Positions 47,824-61,524 of a stretch of DNA of 64,000 nt are shown in pieces. The number at the start of each line of letters is the position of its first letter. Within the stretch, counting starts at the first letter, position 1. The notes below the pieces were generated by a model. The model had not been told where the DNA came from. It saw only the letters and a program-made list of their open reading frames with translations, and searched no databases. The DNA lies in the IMG/VR virus record IMGVR_UViG_3300032116_000001, positions 1 through 64,000 of that record. The stretch is one strand, 5' to 3'. The position numbers were made by a program, and so were the translations under genes.

Positions 47824-48300
47824 ATGTTGATTTTGCCTAAGTTTCACAGCCGATTTGGTGATAAGGGTTTTGCACGCACGCTAGGCAGGCTTATCAGATT
47901 TTATTTTTGGCCTGTTGCCTTTTTTGTCATTTCTCTTGTCTGCCGATTTCAGACTAACCATCATGCAGCGTTTATCTTTAGTGTAGCCACACTGGGAGTG
48001 GTAATCGTTCTGTGCGTTTTATCGGGGTTCGTTGCAAAACTTTCTGAGTCAAGCAATGAACAAGTAGATGCTTTTTGGGCTTTTCTTTCGCATACGGCAA
48101 AGGGCATTTCTGTTGGGTTTTCGCTTTCTGTTTTGAGTTTCATCTTGTGCGTGGCAAGCGTTGTAATTTATAACACCCAAGTCAATGACTTGGTGTCTAT
48201 AACTCTATCGTCTCTTATCGTGGCAAATCTTGTGGTAATGGGCTCTATCGTAAAAGAAACCTTTGAAGACATCGTGCTTGCTTTTAGGGAGCAAAAATAA
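47824..48300 (+). CDS. multi-pass membrane protein
   Basis: 4 TM; promoter motif. Confidence 0.7.
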   Translation: MLILPKFHSRFGDKGFARTLGRLIRFYFWPVAFFVISLVCRFQTNHHAAFIFSVATLGVVIVLCVLSGFVAKLSESSNEQVDAFWAFLSHTAKGISVGFSLSVLSFILCVASVVIYNTQVNDLVSITLSSLIVANLVVMGSIVKETFEDIVLAFREQK

Positions 48301-48394
48301 TGCGACACTATATCATTTTTATGACTTTCTACGATTGTGTGGCACGATCATAAAAAATCCCCCTAATAAAGCTGAGTAATCGGATATATAATGT

Positions 48395-48474
48395 GGGGCA
48401 AATAGCTCAGTAAAGACATATGGGAATGTAACAGTAGAGGTTTCCGCGTATGTTCAAATCCTGTTGCTCCACCA
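48395..48474 (+). ncRNA. tRNA-Ala-like mini RNA lacking an anticodon arm
   Basis: GGGGCAA/TTGCTCC-ACCA with G3:U70; own promoter. Confidence 0.55.
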
Positions 48475-48515
48475 AAAATCCCCTATATTTTCCGCGTTCA
48501 TGCCATATATAAACT

Positions 48516-48698
48516 ATGGCAAAATACACTGTCACCTGCTACAATCCTCACTGCGGCCAAAATGGTCAAGTCATCAATAAAATTGACGTTGACGAGGCTA
48601 ACGAAAATCTACTCGTAGAAAACTTTGGTCAAGGAGGAGAAGATGAAGAAGATTTTTGTGAAGAGTGCGGAATGTTAGGGGTTTTGGAAGAAGCCTAA
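48516..48698 (+). CDS. small Cys-containing protein
   Basis: Promoter motif; CxxxxC...CxxC. Confidence 0.65.
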   Translation: MAKYTVTCYNPHCGQNGQVINKIDVDEANENLLVENFGQGGEDEEDFCEECGMLGVLEEA

Positions 48699-48737
48699 AA
48701 CCATTTTTTGAGGAAAAAATCGAAGGAGAAAATCGAA

Positions 48738-49055
48738 GTGAACAACCAAACCGTAACAATCCCGCAGGTGGGCATGGGAGCCACTCAATGCGTCGGCTCT
48801 GACCGACGAGCGTATACAGTCGTTGAAATTATCAATGACCGAAAAATTGTCCTCCAGCGAGACAAGGTAAAGCGCATCGACTCGAACGGTTTTAGCACAG
48901 AACAAAAGTACTCTTATGAACCAAACCCCAATGGTCACGAAGTTGTTGTGACTTTACGCAAGAATGGACGATGGTGCGAGGTTGGAGAGGCCATCGACAA
49001 CGGAGTTCAATATGTAGTTGGGCATCGAAAAGAATACGACGACCCGCACTTCTAA
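48738..49055 (+). CDS. hypothetical phage protein
   Basis: AGGAG SD with GTG start; PQVGMGAT...SDRRAYTV...YDDPHF. Confidence 0.7.
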   Translation: MNNQTVTIPQVGMGATQCVGSDRRAYTVVEIINDRKIVLQRDKVKRIDSNGFSTEQKYSYEPNPNGHEVVVTLRKNGRWCEVGEAIDNGVQYVVGHRKEYDDPHF

Positions 49056-49192
49056 AACAAAAGCAAAAGACAATGGTATCTAAGAAAATGATGCCATTGT
49101 CTTTTGCGAAAAAATCGAAAAATCGTGGCACACAATCGCAGAAAGTCATAAAAAATCCCTTATCTTTGAGATTCTAATCGGATATATAAATT

Positions 49193-49405
49193 ATGAAGAA
49201 GTTTCTCCTTTTCGCTGGCGAATATACTCCCGAGGGAGGAATGAAAGATTTTCAGGCCTCTGATGACAATGTCGATGCTCTTTACAGAATTTTGTCTTAC
49301 GAAATGGTCAAGCATGATTGGCGATGGTGGCATATTGTTGATAGAGACACTATGAACATTGTTTCAGACAGCAAGTTCCCCGAAGATGGTCCGACCCGAG
49401 TGTAA
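49193..49405 (+). CDS. hypothetical protein, paralog of 49407..49604
   Basis: MKKFLLFAG...WWHIV shared. Confidence 0.75.
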   Translation: MKKFLLFAGEYTPEGGMKDFQASDDNVDALYRILSYEMVKHDWRWWHIVDRDTMNIVSDSKFPEDGPTRV

Positions 49406-49406
49406 A

Positions 49407-49604
49407 ATGAAGAAGTTTCTCCTTTTCGCTGGCTCTTTCCCAAATGAGGGGCAAGGCTGGCGAGATTATAAGTTCACAGCAGATACGATAGGGGAGGTTC
49501 ACGCCTTCCTTGCCAACTACATGGTAAACGAAATGGTGGGCTGGTGGCATATTGTATCTGCGGAAACGATGGAAATTGTAGATAATAACAAGCCGATTCA
49601 TTGA
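49407..49604 (+). CDS. hypothetical protein, paralog of 49193..49405
   Basis: Paralogy. Confidence 0.75.
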   Translation: MKKFLLFAGSFPNEGQGWRDYKFTADTIGEVHAFLANYMVNEMVGWWHIVSAETMEIVDNNKPIH

Positions 49605-49723
49605 TAAGGGCAATTCGTTGAAAAGCGAAAAGTCCTTTTTTCACGCCTTAATGATCGTGCCGCACAATCGTAGAAAGTCATAAAAAATGGGGGCCAATCC
49701 CCCATTTTTTATCTTAGTCCTTT

Positions 49724-50599
49724 TTAGGCCGTCGCCAGTTCTTTCTTTGCTTCCAGGCTCTTGGCCTTGCCTCGGCCCATAATGAAGTTTGCGGCTTTCC
49801 CCGCAAGTCCTGCGGCCTGCACGACCATTTTGGGGTCGTCATTCAGAACCTTGAGCCAGCCCTGAATATAGGCCTGGGTGTTCTCGGTGTCATTGTCGAT
49901 GCCGATTTCTTGGCAGAGAAAGGCGGCTGTGAGTTCTGCTACCAGTTCCTCGCGGCTGTAACCTTCCTTGTCAAGCGTTGAGATTTGCATGACTTCGGGT
50001 CGAGCCAATCGGGATTCGTGGCCCGTCGCGTGACCAAGTTCATGGAATAAGGTCGCGTAATAGGCTTCGGAACTGACAAAAGATTCGATAATAGGCATTT
50101 GGACCCAATCGCCATAAGGCGAATAACAGGCACGATTTCCACCGTGACGAATCTCAGGCACCAGCGGCATTTCTTGGACCACTTCCTCACAACGTTCGAT
50201 GCGGCGATTGTCTTTCAGTTCCTCAATCGGCGGCAGGTCGAGCCCTTCGGTTTGCTCCACATTGAAAACATAAAATTGCTTCAATACGGGGTAGGAACCT
50301 GTCTTGCCAGTCTTATCATCCTCATAACTCACCTGCTTCCAGAACACAATCGGTGTGCCCTTCTCGCCCTTCTTGATTCGCCCGCCCATCTTGTTGATTT
50401 GATTGCAAGTCATCCAGCGCGGGTCGGCAAAGGTAGACATTGACAAAAGCAGAAGGTTGAGCCCGCTATACTTGGTTCCGCTACTGGGGTTGCAGGGTCG
50501 AATCACCGACCAGGGTCGCTTCCAAGCAACGTTTCCGCTCTTTAGGCCCTCGATGATGGTGTTGGTTACGATTTCGTAGACTTCGGACTTCTTCTTCAT
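49724..50599 (-). CDS. ardC: ArdC-like antirestriction protein (ssDNA-binding + zincin-like)
   Basis: WKRPW, YSGLN, IKKGEKG, VFNVEQ, YYATLFHELGHATGH, YSREELVAEL, AYIQGW. Confidence 0.92.
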   Translation of the reverse strand: MKKKSEVYEIVTNTIIEGLKSGNVAWKRPWSVIRPCNPSSGTKYSGLNLLLLSMSTFADPRWMTCNQINKMGGRIKKGEKGTPIVFWKQVSYEDDKTGKTGSYPVLKQFYVFNVEQTEGLDLPPIEELKDNRRIERCEEVVQEMPLVPEIRHGGNRACYSPYGDWVQMPIIESFVSSEAYYATLFHELGHATGHESRLARPEVMQISTLDKEGYSREELVAELTAAFLCQEIGIDNDTENTQAYIQGWLKVLNDDPKMVVQAAGLAGKAANFIMGRGKAKSLEAKKELATA

Positions 50600-50738
50600 T
50601 AGTCTGCCTCTCTTTATATATCCGATTAGACTACGATAGAAAGGGGATTTTTTATGGCTTTCTGAGATTATGGGCCACGATCATTAAAAATCCCCTTTTC
50701 AAGTAAATTCATATAATATAATAGAAAGAAAGGCAAAA

Positions 50739-50906
50739 TTCGCCCGAATTAAATATCGGATTAATGAAGCGAACACATGAATAAATCATGTGGTGACATT
50801 GAAAATAAAGAGGCCGTAAAGATAAGACTTGGCATCCAAGTCAATGCCGTGAAGCCAAGGGCCAACGACATCTGGTGGAGCCTTACCACCACCGAGGCGA
50901 AAAATT
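50739..50906 (+). ncRNA. putative structured ncRNA, copy B (related to 26489..26634)
   Basis: Shared end blocks with copy A. Confidence 0.55.
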
Positions 50907-50960
50907 ACTTGACAATCGGAAAAATCCCCCTTTTCCACTAACACAATCGGATATATAAGC

Positions 50961-51064
50961 AGGTGTCCAGGGGGCGGTGAAAGTCCGCAAGGCGGCTGCA
51001 GAGTCATGAATCTGCAGTGCGGCTGGTTTCCTCTGCGCTTGCGCAAGACCACCCTGGCGAGCCT
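50961..51064 (+). ncRNA. GC-rich structured RNA / 5' leader
   Basis: CCAGGG/CCCTGG, GCGG/CCGC, CTGCAGA/TCTGCAG and TGCGC/GCGCA helices directly after a promoter. Confidence 0.5.
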
Positions 51065-51079
51065 TCACAAGAGAGAAAT

Positions 51080-51292
51080 ATGCACGAGTTTGGTATAACT
51101 TTCCAAAACATCCATGGCGAAACATATGACAGCCCCGAATATGTTGGTCTTACGCTGCCGTTTCGCCCAAATGTTGGTGATGAAATCCTGATTGTGGGGG
51201 CAGGAGGAAAATCCTACAGAGTCTTGAAAGTTGAATATTGCGCTGGGCCATCGTTTGGTGACTTTCTTCTCACCGTCGAACCCGTGGTGTAA
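51080..51292 (+). CDS. hypothetical protein
   Basis: LPFRPNVGDEI. Confidence 0.6.
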   Translation: MHEFGITFQNIHGETYDSPEYVGLTLPFRPNVGDEILIVGAGGKSYRVLKVEYCAGPSFGDFLLTVEPVV

Positions 51293-51333
51293 AAAATCCC
51301 CTATATCTTTTCATCACAAAAGATATAACAAGT

Positions 51334-51570
51334 ATGCTGGAACAGCTGACTCTTGAACATCACGGCGACTTTCATTGCGTGCGTGAGTTTTGGGATTGTG
51401 AATGTGATGATGATTACATTCGGGGCAATGATGACCACAAGTGCGAAAAGTGCGGCATTGAACGCGATGATGCGCCAAACTCTCGACTGACCGAAGTGAT
51501 TGAACGCTATCCCGATTTGGAGAACGTTCCCTGGGTCATTGACCAAGCGTCCAAGAGCTTCATTCACTAA
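51334..51570 (+). CDS. small zinc-binding protein
   Basis: FWDCEC...CEKCG...PNSR. Confidence 0.7.
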   Translation: MLEQLTLEHHGDFHCVREFWDCECDDDYIRGNDDHKCEKCGIERDDAPNSRLTEVIERYPDLENVPWVIDQASKSFIH

Positions 51571-56451: not shown

Positions 56452-56676
56452 TTATAATGAGCTTGGCCTATACTCACGGACCACAGGTGCATCATAGACA
56501 TCGTTGGAAATGTCACTCTGAAGGTCACCACAATCCATTATTTTGCTGCACTTATCAAAAAAAGATTTATCAATGCTTTCACCAAGAAGTTCAGCACACA
56601 AAGCCGCGACCTGAAAGTTGTATTCGCTCGGAACACCAGATTCAGCCATGAGCTTTAGGTTTCGCATTTTATCCAT
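56452..56676 (-). CDS. hypothetical protein
   Basis: Reverse promoter motif. Confidence 0.65.
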   Translation of the reverse strand: MDKMRNLKLMAESGVPSEYNFQVAALCAELLGESIDKSFFDKCSKIMDCGDLQSDISNDVYDAPVVREYRPSSL

Positions 56677-57152
56677 ATTTTCATATATCCGATTAGAACA
56701 CGAAAAACAAGGGTTTTTTTATAATGATCGTGTCACACAATCGTAGAAAGCCATAAAGAAAAAGACCCGTCCATCCATGACGGGCCTTTCTTCCTCTTCT
56801 TTTTGTACTTGTATTTTTTTATTCTGGATTTTTGATAGAGTGTGACTTGGGAAACCCAAACAAGATACAAATGAAAATGGTTAATTACTCCATCCTCATA
56901 ATCTCTTGCATCTGATATACGCCCATCGTATACTTCGACACCGCTAAGTTTCAAGACAACGCGCCCGCCTTGCAAGGGACTCGAACCCAAGCTTCGATGT
57001 TAAACGTTTCTCAGATTGTGAAACTTAATTCACTATCACACTCTTCTTTATATATCCGATTAGAGCCATGCAAAAAGGGGATTTTTTAATGATCGTGGCG
57101 CACAATCGTAGAAAGTCATAAAAAAGACGGATGCTCATATTGAGCATCCAAT

Positions 57153-57353
57153 TTAGAGTCTGCGGTATACCGTTACCCCATTGCGATTATGAGACTTCAT
57201 ATAGCCTAGATTTTCCAGTTTTTCAAGTCTCTCAGCCAAAATCACATCATCAAAAGACACTTTAAGGGACAATTGATAGAGCGTTTTTCGCTCGTTGGTG
57301 CCACCGAATTGTCTCAGAATGGCATGGTCGTATGCGGTCAGATTCTTATCCAT
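57153..57353 (-). CDS. small winged-helix protein
   Basis: LTAYDHAIL...LEKLENLGYM...VYR. Confidence 0.6.
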   Translation of the reverse strand: MDKNLTAYDHAILRQFGGTNERKTLYQLSLKVSFDDVILAERLEKLENLGYMKSHNRNGVTVYRRL

Positions 57354-57571
57354 TAGGACACTCGCTCAAGCCGAATCACACCCGCATCATCGAGTTGCAT
57401 AAGTGCTGGGCAAACGACGTAAGACCTATTGCAGTAATAGCCGTCAGCAGGAAATGCAACACAATCCCCATGAACATCATGGTTTTGTTCGCGCCAAGGC
57501 ATCATATCCATGCCTTTCAGAAGTTCCTTGATGGCTTGCTTGAGAATGTCATTTTCTTCTTGAACCGTCAT
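57353..57571 (-). CDS. hypothetical protein
   Basis: Reverse promoter motif. Confidence 0.65.
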   Translation of the reverse strand: MTVQEENDILKQAIKELLKGMDMMPWREQNHDVHGDCVAFPADGYYCNRSYVVCPALMQLDDAGVIRLERVS

Positions 57572-57923
57572 ATCTTATATATCCGATTAGACCACGAAAG
57601 AAAGGGGATTTTTAATCAACGGCGTAAACAGAAAAGTTTAGCCCCAACAAATAATTGTTGGGGCTAACGACATGCCTATCTTGTCTTGGTTTTTGAGTTT
57701 TCAGTTACACTTTCTTTCTCATGCTGGTAAGGTTCGTCCAGCTACTATAAGGGCTACAGGGCCTGGTCATCGAGCACAATCTGAGTCTCGCGCTTTCCTC
57801 AGTCTTGTTACTTTATATATCCGATTAGAGCCATGCAAAAAGGGGATTTTTTAATGATCGTGCCACATGATCACGGAAAGTCATAAAGAAAGACAGATAA
57901 CTTGTATCTGCCTTTCCAAGTTT

Positions 57924-58328
57924 TCAATCCCCGATGGAGTAGTATTGTTTGAACACCACTACTTGAATGTTCGCCATTATGCAGTGAACAGAAATGTCCC
58001 CGCCCTGCCATGCATTGCCAATGTCATAAAGAACATTTGCAAGTTCGGAGTTTTCAAGCCCAGCCGTGGTGAAGAGATTGTATCTGACCGCACTGTAAGA
58101 CGCATTGCCCCAGGCCTCTTCAACATTTTGGATTCGATTGAACGCATTGTCGCTTGAAATGTCAATCCAAAGCCGCTCTCCATTTGACAAATCGGCGATA
58201 TAGTATTCTCCCCGATTGGTTACAACCTTGCGAATGGCATGATTCAGAAAGTGTTCGCCCGACCGCGTGGGAAGGATTTTTTCAGGCTGAGTAGGATACT
58301 CGGCTGTGATTGTGGGGACTTTGATCAT
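57924..58328 (-). CDS. hypothetical protein
   Basis: Reverse promoter motif. Confidence 0.65.
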   Translation of the reverse strand: MIKVPTITAEYPTQPEKILPTRSGEHFLNHAIRKVVTNRGEYYIADLSNGERLWIDISSDNAFNRIQNVEEAWGNASYSAVRYNLFTTAGLENSELANVLYDIGNAWQGGDISVHCIMANIQVVVFKQYYSIGD

Positions 58329-58470
58329 CTTGACTTTCCACCTAGTTTATATATCCGATTAGAATACAAAAGACAAGGGATTTTTTTAATGATCGTGCCA
58401 CATAAAAACAGAAAGCCATAAAAAATCCCCTTTCTGCATGGCTCCAATCGAATATATAAAGAGAGGAACA

Positions 58471-58953
58471 ATGACTACTGAACAAGTCGCCGCCGCCCTC
58501 GCCACCAAGCGCAAGGGAACAATATTCACCCTTCGCGTTGCACGTCCCGCCAAACTTCGCGCTGGTTCGCGAGATATGGATATTGTCAAGGCTTCCGTTA
58601 TGCAAGGCATGGCGAACACTGACTATGCCAGCCGTGGCCCCGTTCGCGAAGCCGTGGCCCTGGGAGAACGTGATGCCCCTGCCCTGCCCAAGCATATTGA
58701 AAAGACATTCACGGAAAACGACGTGAAGTTTTGGAAAGGCCACAATGGCGAAATCTACTTGCCCGTTTGCCTTACGGGGAATCATGCCGAAGTCACCTGG
58801 CTTCAGGATGGCGAGGAAGTCAGCCTGGACGAAATCAAGGACCATCTGCTTGCTTCCGAATATGCAAGCCGCACCGATAAGGATGACCTTGCAGAACGCG
58901 GCCAAGTGCCCTTTATCGGCGTAAATGTCAAGCACATCGAATCGGTAAACTAA
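58471..58953 (+). CDS. hypothetical phage protein
   Basis: Promoter plus GAGG SD; terminator at 58970-58993. Confidence 0.75.
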   Translation: MTTEQVAAALATKRKGTIFTLRVARPAKLRAGSRDMDIVKASVMQGMANTDYASRGPVREAVALGERDAPALPKHIEKTFTENDVKFWKGHNGEIYLPVCLTGNHAEVTWLQDGEEVSLDEIKDHLLASEYASRTDKDDLAERGQVPFIGVNVKHIESVN

Positions 58954-59068
58954 GCCAGACCATAAAGACTAGGGGCGCAAGCCCCTTTCTTTATAACTTT
59001 CTATGATTGTGTGCCACGATCATTATAAAAATCCCCTTTCTTTTGTGTTCTAATCGGATATATAAAAC

Positions 59069-59176
59069 ATGAACAAAGGATTTACGCTCCCAGAACTTGT
59101 TTTCCTCATGCTTGGAGTTATTATCTTTGTCATCTTGACCCTTGCTGCTATTTACATCGGGATGCGAGTCTTTTGA
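59069..59176 (+). CDS. 35-aa type IV prepilin-like peptide
   Basis: MNKG|FTLPELVFLMLGVIIFVILTLAAIYIGMRVF directly after the promoter motif. Confidence 0.7.
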   Translation: MNKGFTLPELVFLMLGVIIFVILTLAAIYIGMRVF

Positions 59177-59502
59177 TGCCAGAAGTTATCAATGCAGAAA
59201 AATGGCTAAAGGCACCCAATAGACAGGGTAAATGGCTTTGCCTGACCGTGGGCTTCCAAAATTACGACCCACAAACAATCCGAGATTACGATGTCAATAA
59301 TGAACGTGATGGCGCAAGGGTGGTCAAAGCCGATTTCATCTACGTCCATTGGGCATATGACCAAAAGACCAAATCAAAGATTTTGCTCCAGGTGTATGCA
59401 CCGTTCACTTCCCGATGCCCGTCTATGCCACTGCCCGAAGATACCGATGCGGTAAAGTATTTCTATATCGGGCCTTTTGAACTTCCTTTTGACCAGCGAT
59501 AA
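59173..59502 (+). CDS. hypothetical protein
   Basis: Overlaps the stop of the pilin-like ORF (ATG at 59176 also possible). Confidence 0.6.
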   Translation: MMPEVINAEKWLKAPNRQGKWLCLTVGFQNYDPQTIRDYDVNNERDGARVVKADFIYVHWAYDQKTKSKILLQVYAPFTSRCPSMPLPEDTDAVKYFYIGPFELPFDQR

Positions 59503-59964
59503 AAATCCCCTGTATTTTCAAACACAATCGGATATATAAGATATGCAGAACGTAGAAGGAACAAACACCTGGGTGGGCGAGACTGTGCCAATGCAGTTCG
59601 GACGCATGGCTGATGAATGTGGCGAACCGATTGACCATACCGCTGTCACTATCGTTGTCCCCGATTGCCTTGAACACAAAAATGTTCGCATCACCATTGA
59701 AGTCATTGAATGATGGGCAGGCAGTGACCACAATAAAAATCCCCCGTTTCTTATAAGGCAAAACCATATATAAGAGGAGGGGGCAAAAACCCCTACCCAC
59801 ATCCGACCACCAAGACCCTGTACCACGATCAACAACGATGATGATTATGATCGGGCACCCATGTGTCATGATCGCTGCTATAGTAGAGGGGGGGGTACTA
59901 AAACTTTTAGGTACCATAAGGAAGCGGTACGCCACCCCGTCATTTTTTCGATCATGCCAAAAAA

Positions 59965-60225
59965 ATGGCCCCGATAGTTTCCCCGATCATAACTAATATT
60001 GTAGTTTACCCGATAGTTTTCTCGATCATAACCGATCAGAATCCACCCCGATAGTTTTCCCGATCATCTCGCCAGAGTAAGAAAAATAATTTGCGCTTAC
60101 TTTGCCCCCTATGATTATTTTTGTGATAGCAGGGGGGGTGGTAAAATTTTCGAGTAAGGTATCCCCCACCATTTCGGGAATCTTTCTATATATGTATATA
60201 ATTCTTTTCCCCGATCATAATTCTG
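59965..60225. repeat. iteron-like direct repeats CCCGATAGTTT(T)CCCGATCAT
   Basis: Copies near 59969, 60009 and 60046, and a partial copy at 60209. Confidence 0.7.
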
Positions 60226-60438
60226 ATAGTGTATGGGGGGTATTGAAATTTTTCTTAAGGTATCCCTGGTGGGGCCTTGAGTATACGTGAGGAGATTAGA
60301 GTGTTTATTCTCCTCATTTTTTGATGCGAATAACTACGCTATTCGCATCAAGATATTTTGGGCTTTTAAAATGGCTTGTCCATTTTAAAATTTGTTTGCG
60401 ATAAAAATGGTTTTCTTTTCGTAGTATTGTTTGTAGTT

Positions 60439-60975
60439 ATGTTTAAAATAGAAAGTCATTTATCTAAGTTGGCCGAGCATTTTTCTCGGCGCGTTCACAG
60501 TGAGACGGGCTGCACTTATGATGGTGTTGCTTATGACAAGCATTTGGATCATGTTTATGAAGTTTATTATAGATATTCTTATTTGCTTGATGATTCTGTT
60601 AAGACTTTCGTAGAGTGTGGAATTTGGCTTCATGATGTGATGGAAGACTGTCGTATTTCTTACGAGGAGTTATCTATTATGTTTGGTGTTGAAGTTGCTG
60701 ATTTGGTGTATGCGTTGACGAATGAGTTGGGTAAAACTCGATCTGATATTGTGAAGCGTACATATCCGAAAATCCGCGATCATGGTGATTTGGCTATTTT
60801 CGTAAAGCTTTGTGATCGTATTGCGAATACAGAGGCTTCTTTACGTGATGGTAATGAAAAGTACCGATCATTATATTTTCTTGAGTATTTTTATTTTAAG
60901 CAAGCTTTAAAGACTGATGCTTGGGATATCATGTGGCTACATTTGGATTCTTTGCATACGAGGCTTTGCGAATAA
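60439..60975 (+). CDS. HD-domain hydrolase, (p)ppGpp hydrolase/Mesh1-like
   Basis: H...Y..HL, WLHDVMED, VADLVYALT, VKLCDRIAN. Confidence 0.85.
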   Translation: MFKIESHLSKLAEHFSRRVHSETGCTYDGVAYDKHLDHVYEVYYRYSYLLDDSVKTFVECGIWLHDVMEDCRISYEELSIMFGVEVADLVYALTNELGKTRSDIVKRTYPKIRDHGDLAIFVKLCDRIANTEASLRDGNEKYRSLYFLEYFYFKQALKTDAWDIMWLHLDSLHTRLCE

Positions 60976-60978
60976 TTT

Positions 60979-61524
60979 ATGCGTTATTTTTTTGACACTG
61001 AGTTTTTCGAAGACGGCAAGACTATTGATTTAATTTCCATTGGTGTTGTTGCTGAAGATGGCCGCACCTTTTACGCAATTTCTTCTGAATTTGATGTTGA
61101 TCGTGTATTAGATGATCCGTGGATGCGCGATCATGTTTGGTCTTTTATCAAGGATGATTACGAGCATGGAAATACTTTAAGCCGCGAGGAAATAGCTGTT
61201 AAGTTTTTAGATTTCGTTGCTCCTCACCATCACTGGGATATTTTGCATATGAATATTCTGCCATTTGATTCCCCTTATGATTCGGAGTTATGGGGATATT
61301 ACTGTGCTTATGATTGGGTGGCTGTTCGCCAACTATATGGCAAGATGATTAACGGTCCACGAGGATTACCTCATTATTGCAATGATATTATGCAATATCG
61401 CGGCAAGTTGGGTGAGATTGCTTTGCCTCGCATACCCGAAAAGGATCGGCATCATGCTTTAGCAGATGCTGAAGAAGTAAAGCTGATGTTCGAATATTTG
61501 CGTGAAATTGAGGCGAATAAATAA
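60979..61524 (+). CDS. DEDDh 3'-5' exoribonuclease, Rv2179c-like
   Basis: MRYFFDTEF...LISIGVVAEDGRTFYA...AYDWV...HHALADA. Confidence 0.88.
   Translation: MRYFFDTEFFEDGKTIDLISIGVVAEDGRTFYAISSEFDVDRVLDDPWMRDHVWSFIKDDYEHGNTLSREEIAVKFLDFVAPHHHWDILHMNILPFDSPYDSELWGYYCAYDWVAVRQLYGKMINGPRGLPHYCNDIMQYRGKLGEIALPRIPEKDRHHALADAEEVKLMFEYLREIEANK

What the first reader, a model, noticed from the sequence alone, without database searches (positions are those of the whole stretch)
59069..59176. 35-aa type IV pilin mimic missed by the ORF track
A promoter-led ORF, MNKG|FTLPELVFLMLGVIIFVILTLAAIYIGMRVF, has a class III signal peptide (G-1, F+1, E+5) and a hydrophobic helix but no globular head. It could be processed by prepilin peptidase and poison pilus/T2SS assembly, giving superinfection exclusion if the phage uses pili.
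Basis: partly seen in the sequence, partly recalled or inferred. Interest (0 to 1): 0.6.

Follow-up and report, generated by a model that had tools for sequence, protein, structure and literature searches.

The report
Headless prepilin-like mini-gene in a jumbo phage
A freshwater jumbo phage carries a real 35-codon gene whose product looks like the cleavable start and membrane helix of a bacterial pilus subunit with nothing else attached; similar mini-genes recur in other phages and may jam the host's pilus or secretion machinery, but this has never been tested.

Summary
The ORF is at 59069-59176 (+) exactly as described, and it is very probably a real gene. It starts 3 nt after a 45-copy phage promoter, where 26 copies place a start codon. 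Its stop overlaps the next gene's ATG, its codon usage fits, and strain variants differ by four synonymous changes and one V-to-I change. It has the features that define a class III (prepilin) signal: a short leader ending in Gly, Phe+1, Glu+5 and a hydrophobic helix of about 27 residues. It fails both curated HMM cut-offs, and its helix is unlike the host-type consensus. The context supports the reading. The phage also encodes two genuine full-length prepilin-type proteins, closest to Armatimonadota (Fimbriimonadaceae). Genomes of that lineage carry prepilin peptidase, 10-12 PilB/PilT-type ATPases and 37-66 prepilins each. A motif scan of IMG/VR found many prepilin starts that stop after 25-60 residues, and none in 31 bacterial control loci. 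They include annotated 28-31-aa genes of T4-like Aeromonas phages. Processing by the peptidase is plausible. Poisoning of pili and superinfection exclusion are untested inference.

The parts
58971..58996 (+). Terminator-like GC hairpin plus T tract that closes the upstream gene (58471-58953). It sets ORF35 at the head of its own transcription unit.
   Evidence: 6-bp stem, 5 GC pairs, T-rich tail; sequence
59027..59036 (+). Upstream promoter element AAAAATCCCC, 16 nt before the core element.
   Evidence: present at fixed spacing in nearly all 45 copies
59053..59065 (+). Core promoter element ATCGGATATATAA. The start codon follows 3 nt later, which suggests a leaderless or near-leaderless mRNA.
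   Evidence: 45 copies; 26 have a start codon at offset 3; 0.06 copies expected by chance in the window
59069..59176 (+). ORF35, a 35-aa prepilin-like mini-protein (stop TGA at 59174-59176).
59069..59080 (+). Leader M-N-K-G. The predicted prepilin-peptidase cut lies after Gly4 (59078-59080).
   Evidence: Sequence. The phage's two genuine prepilin-type proteins also have 4-residue leaders. Cleavage itself is inferred.
59081..59164 (+). Predicted mature hydrophobic helix from F+1 to M+28, with Pro at +4 and Glu at +5 (59093-59095). Only R-V-F follows, and there is no globular domain.
   Evidence: mean Kyte-Doolittle 3.2 over the 16 residues after Glu+5; highest 19-residue hydrophobicity of all promoter-led ORFs
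59174..59178 (+). TGATG stop/start overlap that couples ORF35 to the next gene.
   Evidence: No convincing Shine-Dalgarno sequence precedes the ATG at 59176 (read).
59176..59502 (+). ORF108, a 108-aa orphan co-transcribed with ORF35. No TM segment, no family match, and the fold was not predictable.
59527..59539 (+). Next copy of the promoter core, which starts the following unit (ORF 59543-59713). It bounds the ORF35-ORF108 unit.

Best explanation
ORF35 is a genuine phage gene, probably expressed early. It encodes a 35-residue inner-membrane peptide built as a prepilin without a head. Shown: the gene sits at the canonical position behind a 45-copy phage promoter, is translationally coupled to the next gene, and is kept at the amino-acid level between strains. 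It also carries the defining features of a class III signal. Inferred: the peptide inserts with its N-terminus in the cytoplasm, the host prepilin peptidase cuts after Gly4 and probably methylates Phe+1, and the 31-residue helix with Glu+5 stays in the membrane. There it would interfere with the host's type IV filament systems (pili, or type II secretion-like systems). It could do so by competing for the peptidase, by occupying the assembly platform, or by entering the filament base as a subunit that cannot be built upon. The likely benefit is host takeover or exclusion of pilus-dependent competitors. My estimates for each step: real gene about 0.9; peptidase substrate about 0.6; interference with type IV filaments about 0.4; superinfection exclusion about 0.25.
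For: Evidence that it is a real gene:
- The start codon is at offset 3 after the promoter core, as in 26 of 45 copies.
- A terminator lies upstream and a TGATG overlap links it to ORF108.
- The codon-usage score is +4.0 in this frame against -10.6 and -1.1 in the other two. Only 0.2% of out-of-frame windows score as high.
- A diverged strain (L043) differs by 1 of 108 nt in the ORF (V21I), against 3-5% in the flanking genes and 5-20% in the intergenic stretches.
- A minor variant contig has four changes, all at third codon positions and all synonymous, in codons 2, 6, 7 and 9.
- There is no Rfam match, and the RNA fold is ordinary.

Evidence for the signal:
- Gly-1, Phe+1, Glu+5 and at least 21 hydrophobic residues match the definition in PMC4471445.
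- The motif is unique in the genome apart from the two true prepilins, and absent from 40 shuffles.
- The best NCBIfam hits are ComGD (E 0.013) and TIGR02532.

Evidence from context:
- The phage encodes two full-length prepilin-type proteins that pass the cut-offs, both with 4-residue leaders.
- Their nearest relatives (56-63% identity) are in Fimbriimonas and Fimbriimonadaceae; 78 of the 80 best genome loci have titles naming Armatimonadota taxa.
- All 5 such genomes searched have Peptidase_A24 and 10-12 T2SSE-family ATPases. Two of them have 37 and 66 prepilin-type starts. One has a PilC-PilD-pilin cluster.
- GFTLPE occurs in a genuine prepilin of that family (L129).

Evidence for a wider class:
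- In IMG/VR, 105 ORFs have K-G-F-T-L-I-E-L, a hydrophobic tail and a stop within the locus. Of these, 7 end within 35 residues of Phe+1, 13 within 50 and 24 within 65. None of 31 Armatimonadota control loci does.
- Cultured examples are Aeh1p044 and PX29 gp038, which their annotators noted as pilin N-termini.
- Published precedent exists for phage pilin mimics and for a 60-residue truncated PilA (PMC12952977).
Against: - Both curated family models are below cut-off. Genuine host-lineage prepilins score 25-41 bits on TIGR02532.
- A profile of 110 host-type N-termini gives 9.7 bits, barely above noise.
- Position +4 is Ile in 110 of 110 homologues of the phage's own prepilins. Pro there is rare: one genuine case with Gly-1 in 101 family genomes.
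- phmmer against 1.84 billion representatives found nothing but the protein itself.
- No RNA data exist.
- The host is inferred, not shown.
- The predicted complex with a Fimbriimonadaceae peptidase gave no verdict.
- The variant evidence rests on one 1.1-kb contig and one 89-nt contig of depth 3.7.
- Nothing bears on pili as this phage's receptor.
Confidence: 0.45

Rival explanations
1. It is a generic small membrane peptide of an early phage region, such as a membrane modulator, an immunity-type protein or a holin-like protein. The GFTLxE start would then be incidental and not seen by the prepilin peptidase.
For: The HMM scores are sub-threshold. The helix is unrelated to the host-type alpha1N helix. 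Pro at +4 is unusual. The peptide is an orphan. Small hydrophobic early proteins are common in phages (my own knowledge).
Against: The strict motif with a hydrophobic tail at an N-terminus occurred 0 times in 40 shuffled genomes. It sits in a phage that uses the same signal on two genuine proteins with the same leader length. The motif codons vary only synonymously. The same 11-residue start recurs on a distantly related phage contig. Headless prepilin starts recur in viral contigs.
Confidence: 0.3
2. It is an upstream coupling ORF. Its translation serves mainly to deliver ribosomes to ORF108, which has no Shine-Dalgarno sequence of its own, and the peptide has no function.
For: The TGATG overlap and the weak ribosome-binding site before 59176. 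Viral mini-ORFs in L236, L164, L209 and L160, and the ORF in L294, show the same stop/start overlap with a downstream ORF.
Against: A pure coupling ORF needs no particular sequence, yet the amino-acid sequence is kept (four synonymous changes and one conservative change) and it carries a specific signal motif. The downstream ORFs of the different phages are unrelated. Coupling and a functional peptide are not mutually exclusive.
Confidence: 0.1
3. It is a remnant or split of a full pilin gene. ORF35 would be the alpha1N helix and ORF108 the former head domain, separated by a frameshift. This could be decay, or a two-gene pilin like Geobacter PilA-N/PilA-C.
For: 35 + 108 residues add up to the size of a pilin. 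The ORF108 frame is open across the whole of ORF35. ORF108 is predicted to contain beta-strands (low confidence).
Against: The variants in codons 2-9 are synonymous in the ORF35 frame and fall on first codon positions in the ORF108 frame. ORF108 has no signal or TM segment that would take it out of the cytoplasm, and no similarity to any pilin or any family. No slippery site fits a shift into its frame (read). The junction is identical in the diverged strain.
Confidence: 0.05
4. It is not a gene. It is a chance open frame in the 5' leader of ORF108.
For: It is very short, there are no RNA or protein data, and it has no homologues.
Against: The start codon is at the exact canonical offset from the promoter. 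The codon-usage score, the low divergence and the synonymous-only variation also argue against it.
Confidence: 0.05

Closest known systems
Class III signal peptide, i.e. the prepilin-type N-terminal cleavage/methylation domain (PF07963, TIGR02532) of type IV pilins and pseudopilins
   Same: A short basic leader ending in Gly, then Phe+1, Thr, Leu, Glu+5, Leu and a run of more than 21 hydrophobic residues. The predicted topology is N-terminus in the cytoplasm (definition in PMC4471445).
   Different: It scores below both curated cut-offs. It has Pro at +4. The helix sequence is unlike the conserved alpha1N helix. The leader has 4 residues against the 6-26 given in the review. No C-terminal domain follows.
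28-31-aa 'pilin N-terminus' genes of T4-like Aeromonas phages: Aeh1p044 (NP_943922.1), PX29 CL89_gp038 (YP_009011467.1) and the Ah1 equivalent. Function unstudied.
   Same: They are phage-encoded mini-ORFs made of a 3-5-residue leader, G|FTLxEL and one hydrophobic helix, followed by a stop. They lie among small genes of a non-structural region in large virulent phages. PX29's is stop/start coupled to the next ORF and Aeh1's to the preceding one.
   Different: Their helices are canonical pilin-like (they pass as prepilin-type in UniRef naming), and ORF35's is not. There is no detectable homology beyond the motif. The host phylum differs (Proteobacteria against probable Armatimonadota).
Truncated phage PilA (N-terminal ~60 residues) in six virulent Pseudomonas phages, and full-length phage FimU/PilA mimics (Sztanko et al. 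2026, PMC12952977)
   Same: The idea is the same: a phage copy of a pilus subunit, either incorporated or blocking assembly, that protects against pilus-dependent phages. The authors explicitly propose that headless versions may inhibit assembly.
   Different: P-FimU proteins are full-length, are built into working pili and are shown to exclude phages. The truncated PilA is clearly homologous to host PilA and about twice as long. ORF35 is shorter, is not homologous to a host pilin and is untested.
PfsE of Pseudomonas filamentous phage Pf4 (PMC8764522)
   Same: It is a phage inner-membrane peptide of about 30 residues, N-terminus in the cytoplasm, that blocks type IV pili and gives superinfection exclusion. 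It shows that a peptide of this size can do the proposed job.
   Different: PfsE acts through an aromatic YxWGW motif that binds PilC, and it has no prepilin motif. ORF35 has no Trp and no such motif.
Naturally head-poor pilins: Flp/Tad pilins, Caulobacter PilA (prepilins as short as 44 residues; PMC4471445, PMC11067988) and Geobacter PilA-N
   Same: These are pilus subunits that are little more than the N-terminal helix.
   Different: They still carry 40 or more mature residues and assemble with dedicated machinery. Flp has G|xxxxEY, which ORF35 lacks, and there was no Flp_Fap hit.

Membership tests
Class III (prepilin-type) signal peptide, PF07963 / TIGR02532 | Hydrophilic leader that ends in a conserved Gly at -1 | tested here: met
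   The leader is M-N-K-G. Four residues is shorter than the 6-26 in PMC4471445. It equals the leader of the phage's two bona fide prepilin-type proteins and is the commonest called length among 110 homologues.
Class III (prepilin-type) signal peptide, PF07963 / TIGR02532 | About 21 predominantly hydrophobic residues after the cut, interrupted by Glu at +5 | tested here: met
   The stretch from F+1 to M+28 has Glu+5 as its only charge. Mean hydrophobicity after Glu+5 is 3.2.
Class III (prepilin-type) signal peptide, PF07963 / TIGR02532 | Score above the curated cut-off of the family model | tested here: not met
   PF07963 gives 10.0 bits against 21.2. TIGR02532 gives 11.9 against 16.3. Only residues 2-11 align.
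Class III (prepilin-type) signal peptide, PF07963 / TIGR02532 | Cleavage after Gly-1 and N-methylation by a prepilin peptidase | not testable with these tools
   The enzyme is present in 5 of 5 genomes of the probable host lineage. The predicted complex gave no verdict.
Type IV pilin / pseudopilin (structural subunit) | Globular C-terminal domain after the alpha1 helix | tested here: not met
   The ORF ends 31 residues after the predicted cut.
Type IV pilin / pseudopilin (structural subunit) | Conserved alpha1N helix sequence that packs with host subunits | tested here: not met
   A profile of 110 host-type N-termini gives 9.7 bits, E 0.16 among 4545 phage ORFs. The two real phage prepilins score 71-74 bits.
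Phage headless prepilin mini-ORFs (Aeh1p044 / PX29 gp038 type; truncated P-PilA) | Phage ORF of 60 aa or less = short leader + G|FTLxEL + a single hydrophobic helix + a genuine stop | tested here: met
   ORF35 has this architecture. The class was documented.
Phage headless prepilin mini-ORFs (Aeh1p044 / PX29 gp038 type; truncated P-PilA) | Sequence homology to known members | tested here: inconclusive
   phmmer and tblastn find none. L294 shares the first 11 residues, but 8 of these were imposed by the search pattern, and the stretch is in frame with a 247-aa ORF.
PfsE-like pilus inhibitors | Conserved aromatic YxWGW motif needed for PilC binding | tested here: not met
   ORF35 has no Trp and no such motif (motif from PMC8764522).
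Flp/Tad pilins (PF04964) | G|xxxxEY processing motif and a match to the Flp family | tested here: not met
   Glu+5 is followed by Leu, not Tyr. No Flp_Fap hit at E up to 10.

The most novel reading that the evidence does not exclude
Headless prepilins may be a widespread, virus-enriched class of host-takeover peptides: phage mini-proteins that are nothing but a class III signal peptide. They would hijack the host prepilin peptidase and shut down type IV pili, competence pili or type II secretion from inside the membrane. On this reading ORF35 is a divergent member from a jumbo phage of Armatimonadota. The members in T4-like Aeromonas phages (Aeh1p044 type) would make the idea directly testable in culture.
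Probability: 0.3. Interest if true: 0.75.

Novelty: new variant of a known kind. Interest (0 to 1): 0.55.

Why it matters
If it is correct, a peptide of about 30 residues that is only a prepilin signal would be enough to disable a whole family of bacterial surface machines. That would be the smallest known pilin mimic. It would also be a new route for phage takeover or exclusion that uses the host's own processing enzyme.

The same architecture recurs in IMG/VR viral contigs and in cultured Aeromonas phages. One experiment in a tractable host could therefore assign a function to a whole set of unannotated mini-genes that gene callers often skip.

The finding also gives a probable host (Fimbriimonadaceae, Armatimonadota) for a 379-kb phage. 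That phage is found in freshwater metagenomes from 14 studies.

Tried and rejected
**Searches and models that gave nothing usable**
- The search for homologous proteins refuses queries under 40 aa.
- tblastn of the peptide and of ORF108 against INPHARED phages found nothing meaningful. Megablast of the region found nothing.
- phmmer of the peptide against 1.84 billion representatives found only the peptide itself.
- The ESM Atlas gave no lead for ORF35 or ORF108.
- Relatives sought through the neighbouring genes were absent or were unrelated small phages without the peptide.
- The promoter pattern was absent from IMG/VR apart from the phage's own record. In JGI metagenomes it found only the same phage at 100% identity.
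- Complex prediction of a Fimbriimonadaceae prepilin peptidase with ORF35 gave no verdict (score 0.00). This counts neither for nor against binding.
- AlphaFold2 of ORF108 gave pLDDT 39, so no fold search was run. ORF108 has no PDB sequence match.
- An RNA element was rejected: no Rfam match, and a fold z-score of -0.89.
- No RNA run holds the phage, so expression and the transcription start are untested.
- tblastn of a 42-aa prepilin start against phages returned nothing, probably because of the low-complexity filter.

**Ideas rejected**
- Stop-codon recoding. The genome has two tRNA(CUA), but table 11 already gives 92% coverage, so I named no other code.
- A programmed frameshift that fuses ORF35 to ORF108. 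There is no fitting slippery site, and the variants are synonymous only in the ORF35 frame.

- Read laying was given 1,501 letters.

Full report
**What is there**

The window is the first 64 kb of a 378,848-bp IMG/VR phage record with 40.6% GC. The phage has a replication module, a portal protein and a major head protein. It also has 34 tRNAs and a tmRNA.

It follows a terminator-like hairpin at 58971-58996 and a bipartite promoter-like repeat. The repeat consists of AAAAATCCCC, 16 nt, then ATCGGATATATAA. There are 45 copies in the genome, nearly all within 1-60 kb, on both strands and always pointing into genes.

In 26 of the 45 copies a start codon lies exactly 3 nt after the core, heading ORFs of 35-228 aa. 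ORF35 is one of these. It is the shortest and by far the most hydrophobic. Its TGA overlaps the ATG of a 108-aa orphan gene (TGATG), which has no convincing ribosome-binding site of its own.

**Is it a gene?**

Four lines of evidence say yes.
- The start is at the canonical offset from the promoter.
- Codon usage scores +4.0 in this frame, against -10.6 and -1.1 in the other two. Only 0.2% of out-of-frame windows from real genes reach that score.
- A diverged strain (L043) differs from the window by 1 of 108 nt inside ORF35, a V21I change. The upstream gene differs at 16 of 483 nt, the intergenic stretch at 6 of 115, ORF108 at 16 of 326, and the next intergenic stretch at 8 of 40.
- A minor variant contig in one metagenome carries four changes in codons 2, 6, 7 and 9. 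All are at third positions and all are synonymous. The chance that four changes all fall on third positions is about 0.012. In the overlapping ORF108 frame the same changes fall on first codon positions.

An RNA element is unlikely, since there is no Rfam match and the fold z-score is -0.89. Public gene callers have called the ORF. The variant evidence is thin: one 1.1-kb contig and one 89-nt contig at low depth. No RNA run holds the phage.

**Is it prepilin-like?**

By the published definition, yes. That definition is a hydrophilic leader ending in Gly, then about 21 hydrophobic residues interrupted by Glu5 (PMC4471445).

The strict motif with a hydrophobic tail near a start codon occurs once in the six-frame translation of the genome, and in none of 40 order-3 Markov shuffles. 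A looser pattern adds only the phage's two genuine prepilin-type genes.

By the curated models, no. PF07963 gives 10.0 bits against a cut-off of 21.2, and TIGR02532 gives 11.9 against 16.3. Only residues 2-11 align. Beyond G|FTLxEL the helix is unlike the almost invariant helix of the relevant bacterial proteins. A profile of 110 such N-termini gives 9.7 bits, at noise level, and all 110 have Ile at +4 where ORF35 has Pro.

Pro at +4 is rare but real. One genuine prepilin start with GFTLPE turned up in 101 Fimbriimonadaceae genomes.

**Context**

The phage itself encodes two full-length prepilin-type proteins of 291 and 253 aa at genome positions 292,303-294,017, outside the window. Both pass the cut-offs, and both have 4-residue leaders like ORF35.

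Their closest named relatives (56-63% identity) are from Fimbriimonas and Fimbriimonadaceae MAGs. Of the 80 best genome loci, 78 have titles naming Armatimonadota taxa; one is labelled an uncultured archaeon and one only 'bacterium'. The host is therefore probably a freshwater member of that phylum. This is an inference.

All five such genomes that I searched carry a prepilin peptidase and 10-12 PilB/PilT-family ATPases. Two carry 37 and 66 prepilin-type starts, none in an open frame under 108 aa. One shows a PilC-PilD-pilin cluster. The phage has no peptidase or ATPase of its own.

**A wider class**

Of these, 111 have a hydrophobic tail and 105 reach a stop within the locus.
- Counted from Phe+1, 7 end within 35 residues, 13 within 50, 24 within 65 and 43 within 100.
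- The nine shortest (24-33 residues) end in TAA and are followed by further stops in the same frame, so recoding is not the reason. Many have Shine-Dalgarno-like sequences.
- Several lie on contigs of 116-312 kb.
- In four short ORFs (mature lengths 26-54) the next ORF starts on the last base of the stop codon, as ORF108 does.
- The same filter on 31 loci from 41 Armatimonadota genomes gave lengths of 138-297 only. Fisher p is 0.001 for 65 or fewer residues. This control covers one phylum only.

Two of the mini-ORFs belong to cultured T4-like Aeromonas phages. Aeh1p044 (28 aa) and PX29 gp038 (31 aa) both lie just downstream of nrdB, and their annotators noted them as pilin N-termini. Phage Ah1 has an equivalent. 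I found no paper on them.

A scan with Pro at +4 found 16 stretches, 4 of them with hydrophobic tails. One, on a 139-kb contig (L294), has the same first 11 residues as ORF35, then a diverged helix of similar length and a TAATG overlap with the next gene. It passes TIGR02532 at 18.6 bits. That contig shares about 15 distant homologues with this phage. Two caveats apply: 8 of the 11 residues were imposed by the pattern, and the stretch is in frame with a 247-aa ORF.

**Mechanism**

Established knowledge (PMC4471445):
- The class III motif alone is enough for membrane insertion with the leader in the cytoplasm.
- Gly-1 is the critical determinant for cleavage.
- Glu5 is dispensable for cleavage but matters for assembly.

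On that basis ORF35 is a plausible peptidase substrate. The product would be a 31-residue membrane helix carrying Glu5 and no head. It could compete for the peptidase, occupy the platform, or dock at the filament base as a dead-end subunit.

Precedents:
- Phage FimU mimics that exclude pilus-tip phages.
- A truncated 60-residue PilA in virulent Pseudomonas phages, which its authors suggest may block assembly (PMC12952977).
- PfsE, a peptide of about 30 residues that blocks pili through PilC (PMC8764522).

All steps after 'real gene with the defining motif' are inference. The strong divergence of the helix argues against smooth incorporation into host filaments. It fits better with action at the peptidase or the platform, or with no relation to pili at all.

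**Verdict**

It is best described as a new variant of a known kind, the phage-encoded pilin mimics and headless prepilin mini-genes. Membership in the curated prepilin family is not met, and the function is untested.

Noticed in passing
window 1-60000 (e.g. 1958, 2928, 21676, 34667, 49177, 52988, 58359, 59053, 59527); genome copies also at 245727 and 366212: A 45-copy bipartite promoter-like repeat (AAAAATCCCC, 16 nt, ATCGGATATATAA) drives nearly every gene of the first 60 kb on both strands. In 26 copies the start codon follows after exactly 3 nt, which suggests leaderless early mRNAs. Other copies have 7-18-nt leaders, several with clear Shine-Dalgarno sequences. The pattern is absent from all other IMG/VR contigs.
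   Followed up: partly
window 48379 (+), 50946 (+), 55203 (-), 57060 (-): These promoter copies are not followed by an ORF within 45 nt. The one at 48379 is followed by a tRNA-like start (GGGGCAAATAGCTCAG) that ARAGORN did not call. They may drive non-coding RNAs. There were no Rfam hits in 48200-51400.
   Followed up: partly
genome G000 292303-293178 and 293256-294017 (outside the window; loci L009, L010): Two full-length prepilin-type proteins (291 and 253 aa; precomputed Pfam hits on the 253-aa protein's closest relatives are PF07963 plus PF07596) are encoded by the phage next to a GroEL-like gene. Their closest relatives are in Fimbriimonas and Armatimonadota MAGs at 56-63% identity. They look like host-derived auxiliary genes, and they point to the host.
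   Followed up: partly
genome G000 294065-294858 and 18056-45291 / 295315-334722: The phage carries 34 tRNAs and a tmRNA (tag AENNFAFAA). Two adjacent tRNAs have a CUA anticodon and would read TAG. TAG is the rarest stop (29 of 282 long ORFs). The standard code already gives 92% coverage, so recoding is not required, and the role of the suppressors is open.
   Followed up: partly
IMG/VR loci L143, L151, L157, L162, L164, L199, L206, L215, L236 (coordinates): Mini-ORFs of 28-44 aa consist only of a short leader, G|FTLIEL and one hydrophobic helix. They lie on viral contigs of up to 312 kb. No such short forms appeared in 31 Armatimonadota control loci or among 103 prepilin starts in two Fimbriimonadaceae genomes.
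   Followed up: partly
Aeromonas phage Aeh1 NC_005260.1 39873-39959 (L290:703-789); PX29 NC_023688.1 30219-30314 (L292:784-879): Cultured T4-like Aeromonas phages keep a 28-31-aa prepilin-start gene just downstream of nrdB in two genera. The annotators noted it as a pilin N-terminus. I found no study of it. It offers a tractable system for testing the whole idea.
   Followed up: partly
L294:542-1285 (IMGVR_UViG_3300031746_000002, 138.9 kb, 31% GC): The same 11-residue start as ORF35 occurs at an internal Met, 37 codons before the end of a 247-aa open frame, with a GGAG 9 nt upstream. It is either a nested or separate mini-gene, or a C-terminal membrane anchor. The contig shares about 15 distant homologues with this phage.
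   Followed up: partly
window 56500-61500: Near-identical DNA of this phage is held by freshwater metagenome runs from 14 studies dated 2017-2025 (some are labelled 'fungus metagenome'). It is a widespread and very stable freshwater jumbo phage. The JGI source contig is Ga0315903_10000009.
   Followed up: no
window 57153-57350 (-), 60376-60972 (+), 60979-61521 (+): The only neighbours with any family signal are a weak winged-helix match (below cut-off), an HD-type phosphohydrolase and an Rv2179c-like 3'-5' exoribonuclease (a PHROG annotated as RNase H). All other neighbours are orphans.
   Followed up: no
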